Positions 16,492 to 23,478 of a DNA stretch of 64,000 nt are shown piece after piece. Both the position numbers and the translations under genes were made by a program. How positions within the stretch are numbered: position 1 is the first letter of the stretch; every line of letters begins with the position of its first letter. Source of the stretch: Vitrella brassicaformis CCMP3155 (lineage: Eukaryota > Protista > Chromerida). Location: NCBI GenBank assembly GCA_001179505.1, contig CDMY01000397.1, positions 1 through 64,000 on the forward strand, in the 5' to 3' direction. The notes beneath the pieces were generated by a model that was not told where the DNA came from, did no database searches, and worked only from the letters and a program-made list of their open reading frames with translations.

Positions 16492-18034
16492 GGATCCTGT
16501 TTTGTTTCTCTCTCCCACTCTGTGCAGTGTGTGTGGGTAGGGATGCTTTACCTTGTCGTACGGCGGAATGCCTGTGATGTTGATCTCCCTGAGCACGTCC
16601 TTGAAGTCCTCCACCTTCTTCATCTGCTCAATCAGACGGCGCTTCTCCTCATCCAACTGATACCCACACACACACACACACACACACACATAAACACACA
16701 CCAAAGGCACCTGCACGACACGCCGGCCTGTCTGTGTGTCTGCCTGCTTGCCTGTTGTTCGTCGTCGGATTCTTCCTCGTCCGAGCTTTCCTCGCCCTCC
16801 TCCTTCTCTGGCGGCTCCCCGCCCTCACCAGCCATCTTCTCATCGCCCACATCGTTCTCACCACCGCCCTCCTCAGGCTCTTTCGCCTCTCCCTCTCCCT
16901 CACCGTCCCCCTTCTTGTCGGCGTCCTGCTGGGCCTCTCCCACCTGCTGCTGTTGCTGCTGCATTTCTTCCTCTGTGGGTGGGGGGATCTCGCCGTCGAG
17001 CTCCCTGACGATGGTGAGGATCTCATCAGGGCACGCCCACCTGCTGACGTTTGTCTCCTTGTTGCGGAAGTAGGTCATGCCATTCTCGCCGGTGATCCGC
17101 AGCCAGGGGGTGTTGCCAATCGTCTCATACTCGAGCACCTCACCAGCCGCCTGCATACACGAGGGAGGGGAACGCACATGCACCTGACGCATCTCCCTCC
17201 CTGCCTCACTCACTCACTGACCTGTTGCGGGTTCGTCCCGGCCACCACGACCACGTCTGTCTTGCCAGCCGGCCGCACCCACCGTGACTCCTTGCTGGTT
17301 GGGCAGTGGTAGTACTTGTGCCCGTTGGGCGCCAGATGCTCCTCCCACACCACCCGCTTCTCCACAGGCGGGGGCGGCTCAGCGAGGGCCGCCGGTGAGG
17401 GCATAATCACGGGCATGATAGGAGGTCCCGGGGCAATGATGTGTGGTGGGAAGGGGATGGTCCCCGGCGGCCTGTGCATGGACATCTGCATGTGCATCAT
17501 GAGGTGAGGGTGCATCATGTGAGGGGGGATGGGAGGGAGCAAGGGAGGCCGGCCGGTGGACACGATGCGCGGCTGGTAGGCAAGTCCAGGTTGAAGAGGA
17601 ATGTCGCCCTGGGCTGATGGGTAGACAGGGGCGGCCATTGAGTCGCCTGCCTGGCCTGTTTCTGCGCTGGCGGCAGGTTGCTGTGCGGGCTGTTGGGTGG
17701 CGGCAGCAGGCACCATGCCTGGCGGACCCATTCCGGGCGGAGGACCATCTGCACACACACACACACAGATCTCATGACAGCACCCATCCCTTCTGTCGCC
17801 CTCCTTCCCCCACACCTGATGCAGTGACAACCGTCGGCTGGTGCTGCAGTGCCGCCGCAGCCGTATCGGACGCAGCTGCGGGTGAAGCACCAGCAGCGGG
17901 CAGCGGAGCGTCACCAGACGGTGTACTGAACACAACACACAATGGCAAATGGACAAGCATCGGCATGCAGACAAATCATCGCCTGGCTACCGACATCTAT
18001 CTCTACAGATGCACCTAGTGTTTCACCTGCTCAT
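14438..18034 (-). CDS. TCERG1: WW- and FF-domain protein, TCERG1/CA150-like (Prp40-related)
   Basis: WW domains WEEHLAPNGHKYYHCPTSKESRWVRP and PWLRITGENGMTYFRNKETNVSRWACP. FF repeats e.g. EDFKDVLREINITGIPPYDKALPKLMYDSRFTAV, DKFVELLDE...DDHRWKAM, QGLRDDPRYSAV. First exon ATGAGCAG|GT; stop after KKGDFY at 14438. Confidence 0.85.
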
Positions 18035-18309
18035 GTGCTTCCGAACTTCGACACGATATGCTGCGAATCAATATTGATCTGATCCGGCAGCGCCTGCAGC
18101 TCAGCCAGGCCTCTCGCTTTGCGCAAAAGAACAGAAAATCTGCCCTGCGCTTTCAACTCACGCAGCAGCGGTTTCAGGGAGCACCCTAGGTGGCCTGACG
18201 GCCAAGTCCCCTGTCGGTCTGTCCAACATGAAAACAGGCACCCCAACATGCAACCCGGACACGAAACACGCAGCACGCAGAGGGCAGATGCAGCAGACAG
18301 GCTTTCAAC

Positions 18310-18323
18310 TCAGCTCGCAGATC
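18310..18323. promoter_or_regulatory. Candidate promoter element TCAGCTCGCAGATC (core AGCTCGCA)
   Basis: Lies in the TCERG1/GT-NT5C divergent spacer; the same core occurs at 2157, 6291, 24793, 37542 and 45480. Confidence 0.55.
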
Positions 18324-18514
18324 TGCTAGGGTGCTCCTGTGAAACCGCTGCGGTGCTGAGCGGAAGCGGCGGAGAAACTGATCAGGACACACAGAAACAG
18401 ACGACCCTACTCTGCCCTGAGCACCTTACACTGAGATCTGCTTCTCTGTTTCTTCTTTGCTGCTCTCGAGCCACTGGTGACCTTGCTTGATTTTGCGACT
18501 CGAATTGCACAGTC

Positions 18515-21500
18515 ATGTACGGCACGGTGCTCTTATGCGCTCAGAACATGGTGCGAAGACGGAACACAACACAATACATACACACAGGGCAGAAATGACT
18601 GTCTGTGTCATGACGTGTGTGGTGCAGGCTGTGAGCGGCGCGAATCAGGTGCTGCTCAACATCGTGGAGGGCGGCCTCTTCCAGGGACAGATACTCCTGC
18701 TGTCGCCATCCAGAGGGGTGGGCAACCACATTGCAACTCTCATTGACTAATGACCGATGAGTGTGTCTGACTGTGTGACAGCCATTTGAGGAGTTCTTCA
18801 ACAAGCATGGTGTCGGTGTGGTCATCGGCACACTCGACACCGTCCTGCAGAAAGCGAGAGATATCAGATATGCCGTACGAATGCACTCATTGAGACGGCG
18901 TGGCCCATTCACTCACTTCAGTTTCGGCCGCCGTCCGCCCGTGTGTGTGCGTGAATGATTAGGTGTGCAACACGATCATGACTGCCCACATCGTGTGTCG
19001 GCTGGCGGACCTCAACATCCCTCACTTCTGGATACTGCACGAGTGGTGGCCCCTCGATGACATGTACACGCACACACACGACACAAGCAGGAGAGAAGGC
19101 CATCAAAACACACGTTCTCCTTGCCGCTGTCAGGTTGCCCGATGAGCTTGCGAAGCGGAATGTGAAGTTCATGGACACCAAGACGGTGCGGCAGGCCTTC
19201 AAGGTCTGCAACTGTGTGGTCAACGTGTCGCACAACCAGAGGGCCATGTACGGGCTCAAAGACGCCGACAACGCCGACGTGGTGCATGTCGGGGTGCCGC
19301 CGCCCAACGACGCGACGAGCTTTGTGGAGGCCAAGCTGTCGACGGCAGGCAACAAGGAGGAGATGATCATACTCGTACAAAACCCATCCACACAGACGTG
19401 CTGCCTCAATGTGACTTCCCTCTGTGTGTGTTGTGCTTGTGTGTGTAGGTGTTGGGCATCGTGTGTCCGCGGAAGAATCAGCACACGGCCGTGCGCATAT
19501 TCAAGAAACTCGCCGGCGACAGGAAGGTCAGCCAAGCAGCAGGCCAGCTGCACGTGCCTCGAGTATGCACACGTGTTTGTGTTTGTGTGTGGTGTGGTCA
19601 GGATGTGCGTCTGGTGATAGTGGGTGCCCGTTACATCCGGGACTATGAGATCGAGTACGTCGAGCAAGTCAAACAGGAGATTGGAGGTCCGCACACAAAT
19701 GACACAAAATGATACACACAACTGACCACGAGTCTGTGTCTGTGTCTGTGTCGTGTACGTGTCAGACGACAGCCGCATTGAGCTGCACGAGGTCACCAAG
19801 GAGCCTGACAGGTATCCACACACACTCACATCGCCTCCCGCCACCTCCCCGGCCATTTACTTGTCCATCCGCCATACATGCAGGTTTTATCGCCGAGCCG
19901 ACGTGTTGCTGGTGACGTCACTCAACGAGGTGACGCCCATGGTCATCCCCGAGGCCATGATGCGCGGCCTGCCAGTCGTCACGACCGACATCGCCGGCAT
20001 CCCAGAGATGCTCACACACGGCACTCACGGATTCGTATACCCACCGGAGCAAGAGGACTCCTTTGTCGAGGTGCGTGCCTTTGTCTGTCAGGCCGCCGTG
20101 TGATCTCTCTTTCTCACGTGTGTCTTTCTGTTTGCACCACCATGTAGGCGTTGTCAAAGCTGGTGGATGACCCGCAGCTGCGGGCAGACATGGGCAAGGT
20201 ATGCAGGAACGGATTGAGATAGCAAGTAGACCGCACCATGAGTGTGCTGTGCTGTGTTGCGTCGTGTTTTGTTGGTTGGTCCAGCGTGCGTCGGAGCATG
20301 CGATGGCCACTTTTGCGCTGAGCGTCATGACGTTTAAGTACTGCAAAATCGCCCTTTCCATCTCGCCAACCATCATACTCATCGACATGGACGGTATACA
20401 GGCAGCCAGACAGGCAGGCAGGCAGGCAGGAAGCAACCACATCGAGACACAGAGACACATTTGTGCTGTGCTGTGTGGGCATGTCAGGAACATTGGTTGA
20501 CTGGGACGCCGGATTCTATGCGCATTGGAAGGACCGTTCGAGTGTGGACCGGACGGTGTCATACGCGATGGAGGAGTGCGTCCCCAAGAACTACAGACAG
20601 GAGGCCATGGACATCTTCCACTCAAAGGGCTTCTTCCTCAACCTCCCTGTACGCACCCCTCTCCTCCATTCAAAGCAATCAAACAGCGTCCATCCATCCA
20701 TCCATCCATATCTATCTCTGTGTGCAGCCGTACCCTGGTGCGATTGAGGCGTTGAAGGCGATGACGGCCGCGGGTTATGAGGTGTGGATAGCCACCAGCC
20801 CCATCAAGACCAGCCACTACTGCGCCCAGGAGAAGCTCGAGTGGGTCCTGAAACACCTCGGCCAAGAGTGGATCGCCAAAACCATACTCACACAGGTATG
20901 GTAGGCTCCTACATAGGGCACCCGCCACGTGCCGCGTGCGCACAGCACGTGGTGTTGTGTGTCGGTTTCTTTCTCTCTCTGTCAGGACAAGACGGTGTTG
21001 CGTGGTGACTTCCTGATCGACGACAAGCCTTTCATCAAGGGGGCACAGCAGGCACACTCATGGCATCAGGTACGCACAATCAGCACACACACTCACACAC
21101 ACACACGCACACGTCTTCTCACCTCCACCTCTGCTCTGTCCTCCCCTCCTCCCTCCCCTCCTCCCTCCTGTCTGTCTGTGTCTGTCAGATCATATTCGAC
21201 CAGCCGTACAACGGGCATCGGGGCGACCTGAGCCGCATGTACCGGTGGACAGAGTGGCAGGAGGTGCTGGACGAGGCACTCAGCCAAGTGGCACACCTCG
21301 ACGACGTCCCCTCCTCACCACCCAAGTCACCCCTCTCGCCCTTCTCACCCGACGCACTGGTCAGATGAGTGGATCGATGGACGGATGGGTGTGGCGGATG
21401 GCTTCATCTGTTATGCTGTGCTGTGCTGTGCTGGTAATCGACAGAAGTGGCAGAAGTTCAAGGAGGAGGTCGACGCGCTGCCCGACTTCTCGTCATACCT

Positions 21501-21912
21501 CAAGGGGGTTGATGAGTGGAGGAAAGACTACACGTCATGGAGGACCGGTACGGTGGACACACACACACGGCAAGACCGGTGTGTGTATGGTGCGTGAATG
21601 TGTGTGTGGTTGAATGGCTGCAGGCAAGGGCCAGGGCGCCAAGGGTGACGTGCGCGATGTGCTCAAGTCGATTGAGAACATCAAGCGCGAGATGGCCCTG
21701 CTCAACATGGACGAGACGCAGGGAGACCCCGCAGAAATGCACATCTTCAGGAAAGGTAAAGACGTCCACACATCCAGAGAGAACAAGACACCCACCACAC
21801 ACACACAGGTGCATCCATGATGGTCACGATTGTGTGTTGGTCATTTTTGATAGGCTACACGCAATGGAGGCGGGGCAGCCCTTCCGGTGCTCGCGGCGGG
21901 CCACTGGGCTAG
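18515..21912 (+). CDS. Fusion protein: GT-B/GT4-type glycosyltransferase + 5'(3')-deoxyribonucleotidase (NT5C-type HAD) + C-terminal extension
   Basis: GT half: MYGTVLLCAQNM|AVSGANQVLL, WILHEWWP, GIVCPRKNQH, ADVLLVTSLNEVTPMVIPEAMMRGLPVVTTDIAGIPEM (E-x7-E motif). It continues in one exon into IILIDMDG|TLVDWD, then ATSP and EKLEWVLKHLGQEWIAKTILTQDKTVLRGDFLIDDKPFIKG (NT5C hallmark segments). Stop TAG 21910-21912. Confidence 0.88.
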
Positions 21913-23478
21913 CTACACAGACCTGCACATCTGCCACATACAATGGTTTCATTTTCTCGTCGACGCATCCATCACTTTCTCTGTCTCTGTGTGCCGGCGG
22001 CCGAGTAGACACAGAGAGCCTCGATCACACTGCATTCGGTGGGATGTCTGGCGGTTTTGGACTGACCTGACTCGTCGTGTCGTGTCTGTCTGTGTCTGTG
22101 TCGTGTGTGTCGTGCATGTTGGATGGATGAAGGATTTTTGATGCCCTGCTGAGCTAGACATGGAGAGACGGCGGGGGCCTGCATGTGCGTGTTTTGTTCA
22201 TCGAAGGATTGTCCAGAGAGACATGGGGAATGATTTTGCTGCATGGCATGTGCGGGTGTTTGTGTGCGTCCTCTTTTCCGTGCGAGGAGCGTCCTGTGGG
22301 CTGCTGGGTTGTCTTGTGCCGGTGGTGTGTGTGGGTGGGTGCCACACACTGCAGTGCAGCTGTCGCCCACGTGTGCTGTGTCCATTCTCATTTTCTCGGC
22401 TGATCGTCTCCGAAGGAGCATAGCACAGCGTTCCACTACATCGATCCTTTTGCTTGTGCGCTTCGCATGGTCCGTTCACGTTTCCTTGTTTGTTGTTTTG
22501 TCATGGCTCTCCCTGGGTCACCGCTCTCGGTGCCGCCCTGGGTAGCGCCGCTATCGCCAACGGCCACACGTCCCCTGGGTAGACGGGAGGGTGTGTGTGC
22601 GGTGACGGTGGCGGGTGCGATCCACGCGGCAGCCAAGATTGGCGACGTGAACGAAGAGAAAGAGCCCCAACTGAATGAATGAATGACTGGCTGACTGACT
22701 CGCTGATTGCAATGCCGTGTTCCATGTACATAGACCAACCATCACATTCATACAGACATACACACACACATTCATGCCGTGAGAGGGGAGGTGAGAGGGG
22801 AGGGAGGGAGGGACGCACCTGGTAAAAAGAGAGATCCATCGCGATTTCTTGTGTTTCTGGTGCTCACACTGACATGCATGGATGTCCACGGACGTATGTG
22901 TGTGTGTGGGGATCCATCCTGCTTGCAGTTGGGTGTGAGGGTGGGTAGGACTGTTCATGCCCTTGATGCCACGCCCGTCGAGGCTTATCGTACACCGTGA
23001 GGACGCGTCTGTGGATGGATGTGCGAACGTCTCAACGGTCTCTACATCACATCGCTGTCTTTCGAGCCTGAACACACTCCCCACATGAGCATCCCGCCAC
23101 TGCAGCAGAGATATCCGCCACCATGTGCAAGGCGACAGACATAGCTACTGCACATGAAGCTGTAGATGTCAGAGAGCGTCACAAGACTCCATACACAACA
23201 ATACTGCACAAGAAAAGGCACCCGACCAACAGCATGAAGCAGCCATGAAACCAATGAAAGAGGCAGCAAGCAGCAAGAGGTCATTCCTTCCTGTGTTGTG
23301 CCTGTCTGTCAGCCGCCGCCCCGCCAAGGCACGCAGTGAGTGACAGGCCTCACTCACTGTGTTCCTTGACAAGAGGGCGGCTAACAGCCAGCGCAGCAAC
23401 ACGCACCACGCGGCCACACCAAGGAAAGCACCAGAGAGAAAGAGAGAGAGAGAGAGAGGGACAGAGAGAGAGAAGGCG

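What the first reader, a model, noticed from the sequence alone, without database searches (positions are those of the whole stretch)
18515..21912. Glycosyltransferase (GT4-like) fused to an NT5C-type deoxyribonucleotidase: candidate two-step nucleotide/sugar-phosphate pathway in one polypeptide
Seen: the GT-B domain (E-x7-E motif NEVTPMVIPE) and the HAD domain share an exon; ...FKYCKIALSISPTIILIDMDG is one continuous frame at ~20283-20392, so this is unlikely to be a gene-prediction merge. The HAD half carries NT5C/NT5M-like segments (DMDG, TSP, EKxxWVxxHLG, DKTVxxGDxLIDDK, SWxQIIFDQPYN). Known: GT-B + HAD fusions exist as synthase/phosphatase pairs (sucrose-phosphate synthase, trehalose-6-phosphate synthase/phosphatase), but those use different HAD subtypes; NT5C enzymes act on deoxynucleoside monophosphates such as dUMP and dTMP. 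Inference: the protein may glycosylate a phosphorylated acceptor and then dephosphorylate it, making either a novel compatible solute or a glycosylated (deoxy)nucleoside. A glycosyl-hydroxymethyl-pyrimidine route is a speculative option, since related dinoflagellates carry 5-hydroxymethyluracil. I do not know of a characterised enzyme with this architecture.
Basis: partly seen in the sequence, partly recalled or inferred. Interest (0 to 1): 0.82.

Follow-up and report, generated by a model that had tools for sequence, protein, structure and literature searches.

The report
Glycosyltransferase fused to nucleotidase-type phosphatase
This Vitrella gene really does encode, on a single mRNA, a sugar-transferring enzyme joined to a phosphatase; it belongs to a widespread but uncharacterised protist family that probably makes a small sugar compound (perhaps a galactosyl-glycerol osmolyte) in two steps.

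Summary
Spliced cDNA contigs from four public runs (three studies) cross all 17 GT-AG introns. In three runs a single contig covers the whole gene. The 18-exon CDS (18515-21912) gives 664 aa, identical to Vitrella brassicaformis CEM09910.1 (A0A0G4FB90), which is annotated only as a GT1-domain protein. Exon 20285-20393 encodes both the last glycosyltransferase (GT) helix and the phosphatase DMDG motif.

Residues 1-362 are a GT4 domain with an invariant E-x7-E motif. Residues 365-545 are a full-length relative of human 5'(3')-deoxyribonucleotidases (1MH9, E 2e-33). Residues 546-664 are a conserved, unannotated tail with a repeated WR-G-GAKG motif.

The architecture is not rare. More than 100 sequence clusters carry it: Perkinsus, dinoflagellates, Amoebophrya, chrysophytes and many uncultured eukaryotes, several as intronless ORFs. 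The nearest relatives of the GT half are nearly all fused. I found no paper characterising the family.

Function is inferred, not shown. The best reading is a synthase-phosphatase that makes a neutral alpha-glycoside. In three chrysophyte contigs and one divergent lineage, GH36 alpha-galactosidase genes lie nearby, which points to a galactoside such as (iso)floridoside. A nucleotide substrate is not excluded. The 5-hydroxymethyluracil idea fits the taxon range poorly.

The parts
18370..22700 (+). Transcribed span seen in cDNA contigs: 5' UTR from about 18362-18370 and a 3' UTR running past 22689, where another junction or the end of the laid stretch begins
   Evidence: X1 record 2, X7 record 6 and X8 record 8
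18515..21912 (+). CDS of 18 exons, 1995 nt, 664 aa plus TAG. Exons: 18515-18550, 18628-18717, 18782-18874, 18963-19063, 19134-19374, 19449-19526, 19602-19686, 19766-19811, 19884-20070, 20148-20198, 20285-20393, 20488-20648, 20728-20895, 20986-21069, 21189-21359, 21445-21547, 21624-21755, 21854-21912
   Evidence: identical to P0213 = CEM09910.1
18515..20362 (+). GT4 glycosyltransferase domain (aa 1-362, GT-B fold), introns included in the span
   Evidence: Pfam Glycos_transf_1 on aa 180-340, 1.4e-30. Predicted structure pLDDT above 90. Foldseek matches HepE, BshA, SPS and MshA with TMt 0.70-0.83
19927..19953 (+). E-x7-E motif, E272...E280 (EVTPMVIPE)
   Evidence: Both Glu residues are invariant in 82 family members
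20285..20393 (+). Junction exon (aa 337-373). It encodes the last GT-B helix (RASEHAMATFALSVMTFKYCKIALS), a 3-residue linker and HAD motif I (ILIDMDG; D370 at 20384-20386, D372 at 20390-20392)
   Evidence: Joints 20198|20285, contig arithmetic for 20393|20488, translation
20369..21293 (+). NT5C-type HAD phosphatase domain (aa 365-545): motif II T449-S450-P451 (20794-20802), motif III K484 (20989-20991), motif IV D494-D495 (21019-21024)
   Evidence: Pfam NT5C 1.2e-22. Human mdN 1MH9 at E 2e-33. Foldseek TMt 0.81-0.85, rmsd 2.2 A. Motif residues present in 72-82 of 82 sequences; S450 is S in 53 and A in 23
21294..21909 (+). C-terminal module (aa 546-664): a low-complexity linker, then helices carrying two copies of [FY]R..Y..WR.G...GA[KR]G (aa 592-609 = 21517-21547 plus 21624-21646; aa 643-660 = 21746-21755 plus 21854-21897)
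   Evidence: Conserved in Perkinsus, dinoflagellates, Amoebophrya and uncultured lineages. No Pfam or NCBIfam hit. pLDDT 35-75

Best explanation
This is a genuine single gene of Vitrella brassicaformis. It encodes a cytosolic three-part protein: an N-terminal retaining GT4 glycosyltransferase, an NT5C-type HAD phosphatase joined by only about three residues to the last GT-B helix, and a conserved C-terminal tail. Shown: one mRNA, both domain identities, intact and family-wide invariant catalytic residues in both halves, and near-obligate coupling of this GT4 subfamily with NT5C across many protist lineages. Inferred: the two halves act in sequence, as in sucrose-phosphate or trehalose-phosphate synthase/phosphatase pairs. 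The GT would transfer a sugar from an NDP-sugar to a small phosphorylated acceptor, and the HAD domain would then remove the phosphate, releasing a neutral alpha-glycoside. More speculative: the sugar is galactose and the product is a galactosyl-polyol such as isofloridoside or floridoside (UDP-Gal plus glycerol-3-phosphate), with the tail acting as a regulatory element.
For: Single transcript and exon model. Uninterrupted fused ORFs in other species: Symbiodinium natans, L001-L006, L011-L013. Domains. Conservation: D370, K484, E272, E280, R195 and K196 are invariant; D372, D494 and D495 are in 81 of 82 sequences; the HAD cap has its own fixed signature of W378, R394, Y398 and M400 (76-80 of 82), which varies in stand-alone NT5C proteins. 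Coupling: all 120 listed full-length hits carry PF00534 plus PF06941. The nearest relatives of the GT half are nearly all fused, and the two 'GT-only' hits I examined are followed at once by an NT5C ORF. Geometry: the GT-B C-terminal helix (aa 348-362) runs straight into HAD strand 366-370, which tethers the phosphatase beside the acceptor-binding N-domain. Domain order matches the known synthase-phosphatase fusions. Galactoside hint: GH36 Melibiase genes lie about 0.55 kb away, divergently, in two chrysophyte contigs of very different GC (L009 56%, L010 36%); about 3.7 kb upstream in a third (L048, 48%); and about 1.3 kb away in the very divergent L008. Chrysophytes (Ochromonas/Poterioochromonas) use isofloridoside (PMC8703398; Kauss 1967 as cited in PMC7179215), Symbiodinium accumulates floridoside (PMC5559212), and a GH36 enzyme can form isofloridoside by reverse hydrolysis (PMC8509150).
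Against: No activity, substrate or product was tested. To my knowledge, every characterised NT5C-family member is a nucleotidase, and the HAD half keeps about 35-45% identity to human mdN/cdN with an aromatic pocket. GH36 adjacency is absent from the Vitrella window, Perkinsus, Symbiodinium, L011-L014 and the other loci with a GT domain. Three of the four positive contigs are chrysophytes, so shared ancestry explains part of the signal. In red algae floridoside is made by TPS-like GT20 enzymes, and Symbiodinium has homologues of those (PMC5559212). The N-terminal acceptor domain aligned to no solved structure by sequence, so nothing shows a phosphate-binding acceptor site.
Confidence: 0.45

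Rival explanations
1. Nucleotide-directed enzyme. The NT5C half is a true (deoxy)nucleoside-monophosphate phosphatase and the GT half glycosylates a nucleotide or nucleoside. The product would be a glycosyl-nucleoside, or the protein would serve nucleotide-pool sanitation or modification. This includes the reader's glycosyl-hydroxymethyl-pyrimidine idea.
For: The HAD half is a full-length relative of human mdN/cdN, cap included (E 2e-33; TMt 0.81-0.85). Aromatic residues persist at the base-stacking positions (F49 to W378, W76 to Y398, F102 to F422; residue roles are from my own recollection of the mdN structures). NT5C domains are fused elsewhere to nucleotide enzymes, for example NUDIX-NT5C in P0004. 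A 2025 paper on dU-DNA phages is the only one that cites the NT5C Pfam accession PF06941 (PMC12697855; not read further). PF20706 GT4-conflict scores just above its cutoff.
Against: The family is equally conserved in chrysophytes and many lineages not known for 5-hmU DNA. Several mdN substrate-contact positions are replaced and then fixed differently (F75 to S, S78 to M, R163 variable, new R394). The only informative neighbours are alpha-galactosidases. The PF20706 match covers only the generic donor-binding half.
Confidence: 0.2
2. Two activities that are not sequential. The GT half works on a polymer, lipid or protein acceptor, like most GT4 enzymes. The NT5C half acts separately, for example by clearing nucleotide by-products or as a ligand-sensing regulatory domain.
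For: Top sequence and structure matches of the GT half include polysaccharide and glycoconjugate enzymes (HepE, PglA, WaaG, stp2, EpsE). No acceptor site could be identified.
Against: Coupling of this particular GT4 subfamily to NT5C is near-obligate, with a fixed 3-residue junction across deep lineages. The HAD catalytic residues are invariant, so it is not a dead domain. GT4 releases NDP, not the NMP that an NT5C enzyme would use. There is no signal peptide or membrane segment; the protein starts directly with strand beta-1.
Confidence: 0.2
3. Annotation or assembly artefact: two neighbouring genes merged by gene prediction.
For: None beyond the general frequency of merged models in protist genomes.
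Against: Single cDNA contigs from three studies cross the junction. One exon encodes the end of the GT half and the start of the HAD half. Intronless single ORFs with the same architecture occur in other species.
Confidence: 0.02

Closest known systems
Sucrose-phosphate synthase with its SPP-like domain (GT4 plus HAD), and mannosylfructose-phosphate synthase/phosphatase
   Same: A GT4 retaining transferase sits N-terminal and a HAD phosphatase-type domain C-terminal. The logic is to glycosylate a phospho-acceptor and then dephosphorylate it. Thermosynechococcus SPS (6KIH) is among the structural and sequence matches.
   Different: The HAD here is the NT5C type (helical C1 cap, nucleotidase lineage), not the S6PP/TPP-type IIB cap. 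The N-terminal acceptor domain has its own signature (SGANQ, CNTIMTAH, WILHEWW, KRN). The acceptor is unknown.
Floridoside/isofloridoside-phosphate synthase-phosphatase of red algae (TPS-like, e.g. Galdieria Gasu_26940)
   Same: A bifunctional synthase/phosphatase polypeptide that makes an alpha-galactosyl-glycerol osmolyte. This is the candidate product class suggested by the GH36 neighbours.
   Different: Those enzymes are GT20 plus a TPP-type HAD (PMC5559212, PMC6642608 abstract). This one is GT4 plus NT5C. If it makes the same product, it is a non-homologous route.
Human mitochondrial and cytosolic 5'(3')-deoxyribonucleotidases (mdN 1MH9, cdN 2I7D)
   Same: The HAD half aligns over its full length with all four HAD motifs, TSPIK identical and the same cap topology (E 2e-33, TMt about 0.82).
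   Different: Those are stand-alone 200-aa enzymes. Here the domain is fused behind a glycosyltransferase, and the cap pocket residues are changed and fixed (W378, R394, S397, Y398, M400).
BshA and MshA (GT4 enzymes acting on small acceptors: L-malate, inositol-1-phosphate)
   Same: They are the best profile and sequence matches in the PDB for the GT half. They use small soluble acceptors, and in the mycothiol pathway a phosphatase step follows MshA (own knowledge).
   Different: Only the donor-binding C-terminal Rossmann domain aligns. There is no similarity in the acceptor domain, and those enzymes are not fused to a phosphatase.

Membership tests
CAZy GT4 / Pfam Glycos_transf_1 (retaining GT-B) | Profile match above the curated threshold | tested here: met
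   PF00534 scores 106.6 bits against a cutoff of 26.4; PF13692 scores 93.7
CAZy GT4 / Pfam Glycos_transf_1 (retaining GT-B) | E-x7-E motif with both glutamates | tested here: met
   E272 and E280 are present and invariant in 82 of 82 sequences
CAZy GT4 / Pfam Glycos_transf_1 (retaining GT-B) | Two-Rossmann GT-B fold with a C-terminal helix crossing back | tested here: met
   AlphaFold model with pLDDT above 90. Foldseek matches HepE with TMt 0.79-0.83 for chain A (0.76 for 4xsu_B), and BshA, SPS and MshA with 0.70-0.77
CAZy GT4 / Pfam Glycos_transf_1 (retaining GT-B) | Retaining transfer from an NDP-sugar | not testable with these tools
   Needs an enzyme assay
NT5C family (5'(3')-deoxyribonucleotidase, HAD superfamily) | Profile match above the curated threshold | tested here: met
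   PF06941 scores 81.1 bits against a cutoff of 24.8, over aa 365-536 and profile positions 2-173 of 180
NT5C family (5'(3')-deoxyribonucleotidase, HAD superfamily) | HAD motifs I-IV (DxDG, T-S-P, K, DD) | tested here: met
   D370/D372, T449-S450-P451, K484 and D494/D495 are present. Conservation in 82 sequences: D370 and K484 82, D372, D494 and D495 81, P451 81, T449 72, S450 53 with A in 23
NT5C family (5'(3')-deoxyribonucleotidase, HAD superfamily) | Core plus four-helix cap as in mdN/cdN | tested here: met
   Foldseek matches to 1MH9, 1Z4I, 2I7D and 4YIH with TMt 0.81-0.85, rmsd 2.1-2.5 A
NT5C family (5'(3')-deoxyribonucleotidase, HAD superfamily) | Nucleotide-contact residues of mdN (F49, F75, W76, V77, S78, W96, F102, I133; roles recalled from the mdN structure papers) | tested here: inconclusive
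   The alignment gives W, S, Y, A, M, F, F, I. Aromatic character is kept at four positions, but the other positions differ. The fused family fixes its own set
NT5C family (5'(3')-deoxyribonucleotidase, HAD superfamily) | dNMP phosphatase activity | not testable with these tools
   Needs an enzyme assay
Glycoside-phosphate synthase/phosphatase fusions (SPS-SPP, TPS-TPP type) | Synthase and HAD phosphatase in one polypeptide, synthase first | tested here: met
Glycoside-phosphate synthase/phosphatase fusions (SPS-SPP, TPS-TPP type) | HAD domain of the S6PP / Trehalose_PPase (IIB cap) type | tested here: not met
   The Pfam scan lists NT5C, Hydrolase, HAD and HAD_2 only, with no S6PP or Trehalose_PPase
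Glycoside-phosphate synthase/phosphatase fusions (SPS-SPP, TPS-TPP type) | Phosphorylated acceptor and sequential dephosphorylation | not testable with these tools
   Inferred only from the obligate coupling
Known (iso)floridoside-phosphate synthases (TPS-like) | GT20 (Glyco_transf_20) catalytic domain | tested here: not met
   No GT20 hit; the domain is GT4

The most novel reading that the evidence does not exclude
The family glycosylates a nucleotide rather than a polyol-phosphate. The GT4 half would add a sugar to a (deoxy)nucleoside monophosphate, possibly a modified pyrimidine such as hmdUMP in alveolates, and the cdN-like half would then release a glycosyl-nucleoside. That would be a eukaryotic small-molecule nucleoside-glycosylation pathway with no described counterpart.
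Probability: 0.1. Interest if true: 0.85.

Novelty: new variant of a known kind. Interest (0 to 1): 0.55.

Why it matters
Synthase-phosphatase fusions are the standard way cells make compatible solutes such as sucrose, trehalose and floridoside. This family would add a version built from different parts: GT4 plus a nucleotidase-lineage HAD domain. It is spread across ecologically important protists, including coral symbionts, Syndiniales and Perkinsus parasites, chrysophytes and abundant uncultured marine eukaryotes.

The isofloridoside pathway of Ochromonas/Poterioochromonas has been characterised with enzyme preparations since the 1960s-70s. I found no gene assigned to it in the paper library. 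The GH36 neighbourhood makes this family a concrete, cheaply testable candidate. It also questions the homology-only assignment of floridoside synthesis in Symbiodinium to TPS-like genes.

If the substrate instead proves to be a nucleotide, the finding would be more surprising still.

Tried and rejected
- **Upstream start:** I first took ATG 18595 as the start.
- **Pfam on single exons:** only weak NT5C signal. This was resolved once the full protein P0213 was found through the big search with exon 20728-20895.
- **Bacterial or viral origin of the fused contigs:** rejected. Neighbours are eukaryotic (LTR retroelement, P-type ATPase, SMC, gelsolin, DDAH, MINDY).
- **Unfused relatives of the GT half:** the two 'GT-only' hits I checked are split calls of fused genes.
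- **Stand-alone NT5C in Vitrella:** none found, but the word search scored only 116 candidates, so absence is not shown.
- **GH36 in the Vitrella window:** none.
- **Acceptor-site inference from solved GT4 structures:** failed. Only the donor domain aligns, even with a family profile.
- **Paper searches:** searches for the architecture, the accession numbers and an isofloridoside-phosphate synthase gene found nothing relevant. The GT4 fusion in preprint 10.64898/2026.09.25.754361 is a different protein, BE2-GT4.
- **ESM Atlas look-alikes:** only generic bacterial GT4 clusters.
- **High-depth element at 18128-18301:** Rfam and folding gave nothing.
Full report
**1. What is in the sequence**

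The region is a multi-exon eukaryotic gene on the + strand (window GC about 57%). I drew exon borders by hand from the three forward frames and tested them against public reads.

- Four runs hold about half of the sampled words of 18400-22100, as spliced RNA would.
- Laying their contigs on 17800-22700 showed 14 junctions directly, all GT..AG.
- Three junctions beside simple repeats (20393|20488, 20648|20728, 21069|21189) were dropped from the joint table. The coordinates of the contig pieces fix them:
  - X2 record 4 runs 20487-20648 and then 20728-20892 without a gap.
  - X1 record 2 has 575 nt between 20068 and 21189, exactly the sum of my exon pieces.
- In X1, X7 and X8 one contig runs from about 18365 to beyond 22700. 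Its 2928 nt on the stretch equal the sum of the 18 exons plus UTRs.
- The CDS is 1995 nt, or 664 aa.
- Exon 20285-20393 encodes RASEHAMATFALSVMTFKYCKIALSISPTIILIDMDG. That is the last helix of the glycosyltransferase, a three-residue linker and HAD motif I.

**2. Identity**

- No tool takes a spliced protein by reference, so I searched the representative library with exon 20728-20895.
- Long hits had the NT5C stretch in their C-terminal half, and Pfam showed Glycos_transf_1 plus NT5C in nine of ten tested.
- A word search with the closest full-length hit (P0009) returned P0213, 664 aa. It is letter-for-letter identical to my model.
- P0213 is CEM09910.1 / UniRef100_A0A0G4FB90 of Vitrella brassicaformis CCMP3155, named only 'Glycosyl transferase family 1 domain-containing protein'.

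So the window is Vitrella, and the protein is deposited but has no functional name.

**3. Anatomy**

- **Domains.** Pfam on the whole protein gives Glycos_transf_1 on aa 180-340 (1.4e-30) and NT5C on aa 365-536 (1.2e-22). Nothing hits aa 545-664.
- **Model.** An AlphaFold model built on 82 family members has mean pLDDT 88 and pTM 0.79. Both enzyme domains exceed 90, and the tail scores 35-75.
- **Structural matches.** Foldseek finds GT4 enzymes for the first half: HepE with TMt 0.79-0.83 for chain A (0.76 for 4xsu_B), then BshA, SPS, MshA, TreT and GlgM. For the second half it finds human mdN/cdN with TMt 0.81-0.85 and rmsd about 2.2 A.
- **Sequence matches.** The HAD half matches mdN 1MH9 at E 2e-33 over its whole length, cap included. 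The GT half matches MshA, TreT and PimA. With a family profile it matches BshA best, but only through the donor-binding domain.
- **Junction.** The GT-B C-terminal helix (aa 348-362) leads straight into HAD strand 366-370. The phosphatase is therefore held next to the acceptor-binding N-domain; this is an inference from the secondary structure.
- **Location.** The protein starts directly with strand beta-1, so there is no targeting peptide and it is presumably cytosolic.

**4. Family**

- All 120 listed relatives of P0009 carry both Pfam domains.
- Named members:
  - Dinoflagellates and relatives: Symbiodinium natans, Effrenium voratum, Amphidinium massartii, Ansanella granifera, Amoebophrya sp. 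A25, and Perkinsus chesapeaki (there named a cytosolic 5',3'-nucleotidase).
  - Chrysophytes: Mallomonas, Ochromonas, Chlorochromonas danica and Epipyxis.
- Many more come from marine metagenomes and metatranscriptomes.
- Several are uninterrupted ORFs: L001-L006, L011-L013 and Symbiodinium. These are independent proof that the fusion is one protein.
- Searching with the GT half alone gives almost only fused proteins. The two 'GT-only' hits I examined are followed immediately by an NT5C ORF on eukaryotic contigs.
- In an 82-sequence alignment the catalytic residues of both halves are invariant or nearly so: E272, E280, R195, K196, D370, D372, K484, D494 and D495.
- The acceptor domain has its own near-invariant signature: N11, S15-G-A-N18, C75-N-T, W96, H99-E-W-W102, R115, Q142 and Y146.
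- The HAD cap pocket is fixed as W378, R394, Y398 and M400 in 76-80 of 82 sequences. The same positions vary among 82 stand-alone NT5C proteins.
- A quick tree shows several deep clades: dinoflagellates with Amoebophrya; chrysophytes with allies; Vitrella with Perkinsus and a compact-genome marine group; and a large environmental clade. It has local support values only and is not a tested phylogeny.
- The tail carries two copies of [FY]R..Y..WR.G...GA[KR]G, conserved across most clades.

**5. Function**

Nothing here measures activity. Near-obligate coupling, the fixed short junction, the domain order and two live active sites best fit a synthase-phosphatase that releases a neutral alpha-glycoside.

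The only informative genomic context is GH36 alpha-galactosidase (Pfam Melibiase):

- Two tandem copies lie about 0.55 kb away, divergently, in chrysophyte contigs L009 (GC 56%) and L010 (GC 36%).
- One copy lies about 3.7 kb upstream in chrysophyte contig L048 (GC 48%).
- One 1301-aa copy lies about 1.3 kb away in L008, whose fused protein is very divergent.
- No other neighbours are shared.

Background from papers:

- Chrysophytes are the classic isofloridoside organisms (PMC8703398; Kauss 1967 as listed in PMC7179215).
- Symbiodinium accumulates floridoside (PMC5559212).
- A GH36 enzyme can form isofloridoside by reverse hydrolysis (PMC8509150).

This suggests UDP-Gal plus glycerol-3-phosphate as substrates, but it is a lead, not a result. 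GH36 is not near the gene in Vitrella, Perkinsus, Symbiodinium or the compact-genome group. Red algae use GT20 enzymes for the same product. An earlier unchecked note of this scan reports a GH36 gene elsewhere in the Vitrella genome.

The rival nucleotide reading rests on the close kinship of the HAD half with deoxyribonucleotidases. It cannot be excluded. Its 5-hmU version fits the taxon range poorly.

**6. Novelty and verdict**

- The architecture is common in sequence databases, but I found no paper that characterises it.
- I class it as a new variant of the synthase-phosphatase kind, because the HAD subtype differs from all described fusions of that kind.
- Interest is moderate. The family is widespread in ecologically important protists, and a cheap enzyme assay could settle whether it is the missing (iso)floridoside route of chrysophytes and alveolates or something stranger.

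Noticed in passing
window 18128-18301: Contig depth here is 40-60 times that of the gene in all four runs, and many different contigs leave the element on both sides. An A/C difference at 18264 and a 1-nt deletion at 18231 occur in some contigs. It looks like a dispersed transcribed repeat. There is no second copy in the window, no Rfam family and no unusual fold.
   Followed up: partly
window 21362: In X1, X2 and X8 a contig with 190-255 unlike letters on its left joins the stretch 2 nt inside intron 21360-21444. It could be an alternative 5' exon, an intron-retaining form or an assembly chimera.
   Followed up: no
window 17210-18190 (- strand): The upstream neighbour is a minus-strand gene. 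Its ORF at 17210-17974 encodes a proline-rich protein with a WW-domain-like segment (WEEHLAPNGHKYYHCPTSKESRWVRP; my reading, no domain scan run). A spliced intron lies at 17926-18026 (CT..AC on the + strand), and cDNA contigs reach about 18190, so the two genes are head to head.
   Followed up: partly
window 21854-22700 and beyond: The 3' UTR is at least 780 nt. All four runs leave the stretch at 22689 with the same unlike letters. This is either a further junction in the UTR or a result of the laid stretch ending at 22700.
   Followed up: no
window 21517-21897 (aa 592-660): Two copies of a [FY]R..Y..WR.G...GA[KR]G motif sit in the C-terminal tail. They are conserved from Perkinsus and dinoflagellates to uncultured marine lineages and match no known domain.
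   Followed up: partly
P0004 (Logan contig, 373 aa): A different fusion of the same phosphatase type: NUDIX (aa 53-159) plus NT5C (aa 185-355). This suggests a two-step NTP-to-nucleoside sanitising enzyme.
   Followed up: no
L009 1475-9447 and L010 2652-9435: Two tandem GH36 alpha-galactosidase copies lie next to the fused gene in two chrysophyte contigs that differ by 20 points in GC content.
   Followed up: partly
L055-L098: Stand-alone NT5C genes lie on long metagenome contigs that I took to be prokaryotic (not checked). They are 38-44% identical to the Vitrella HAD half, about as close as the human enzymes, so the source of the fused domain is open.
   Followed up: no
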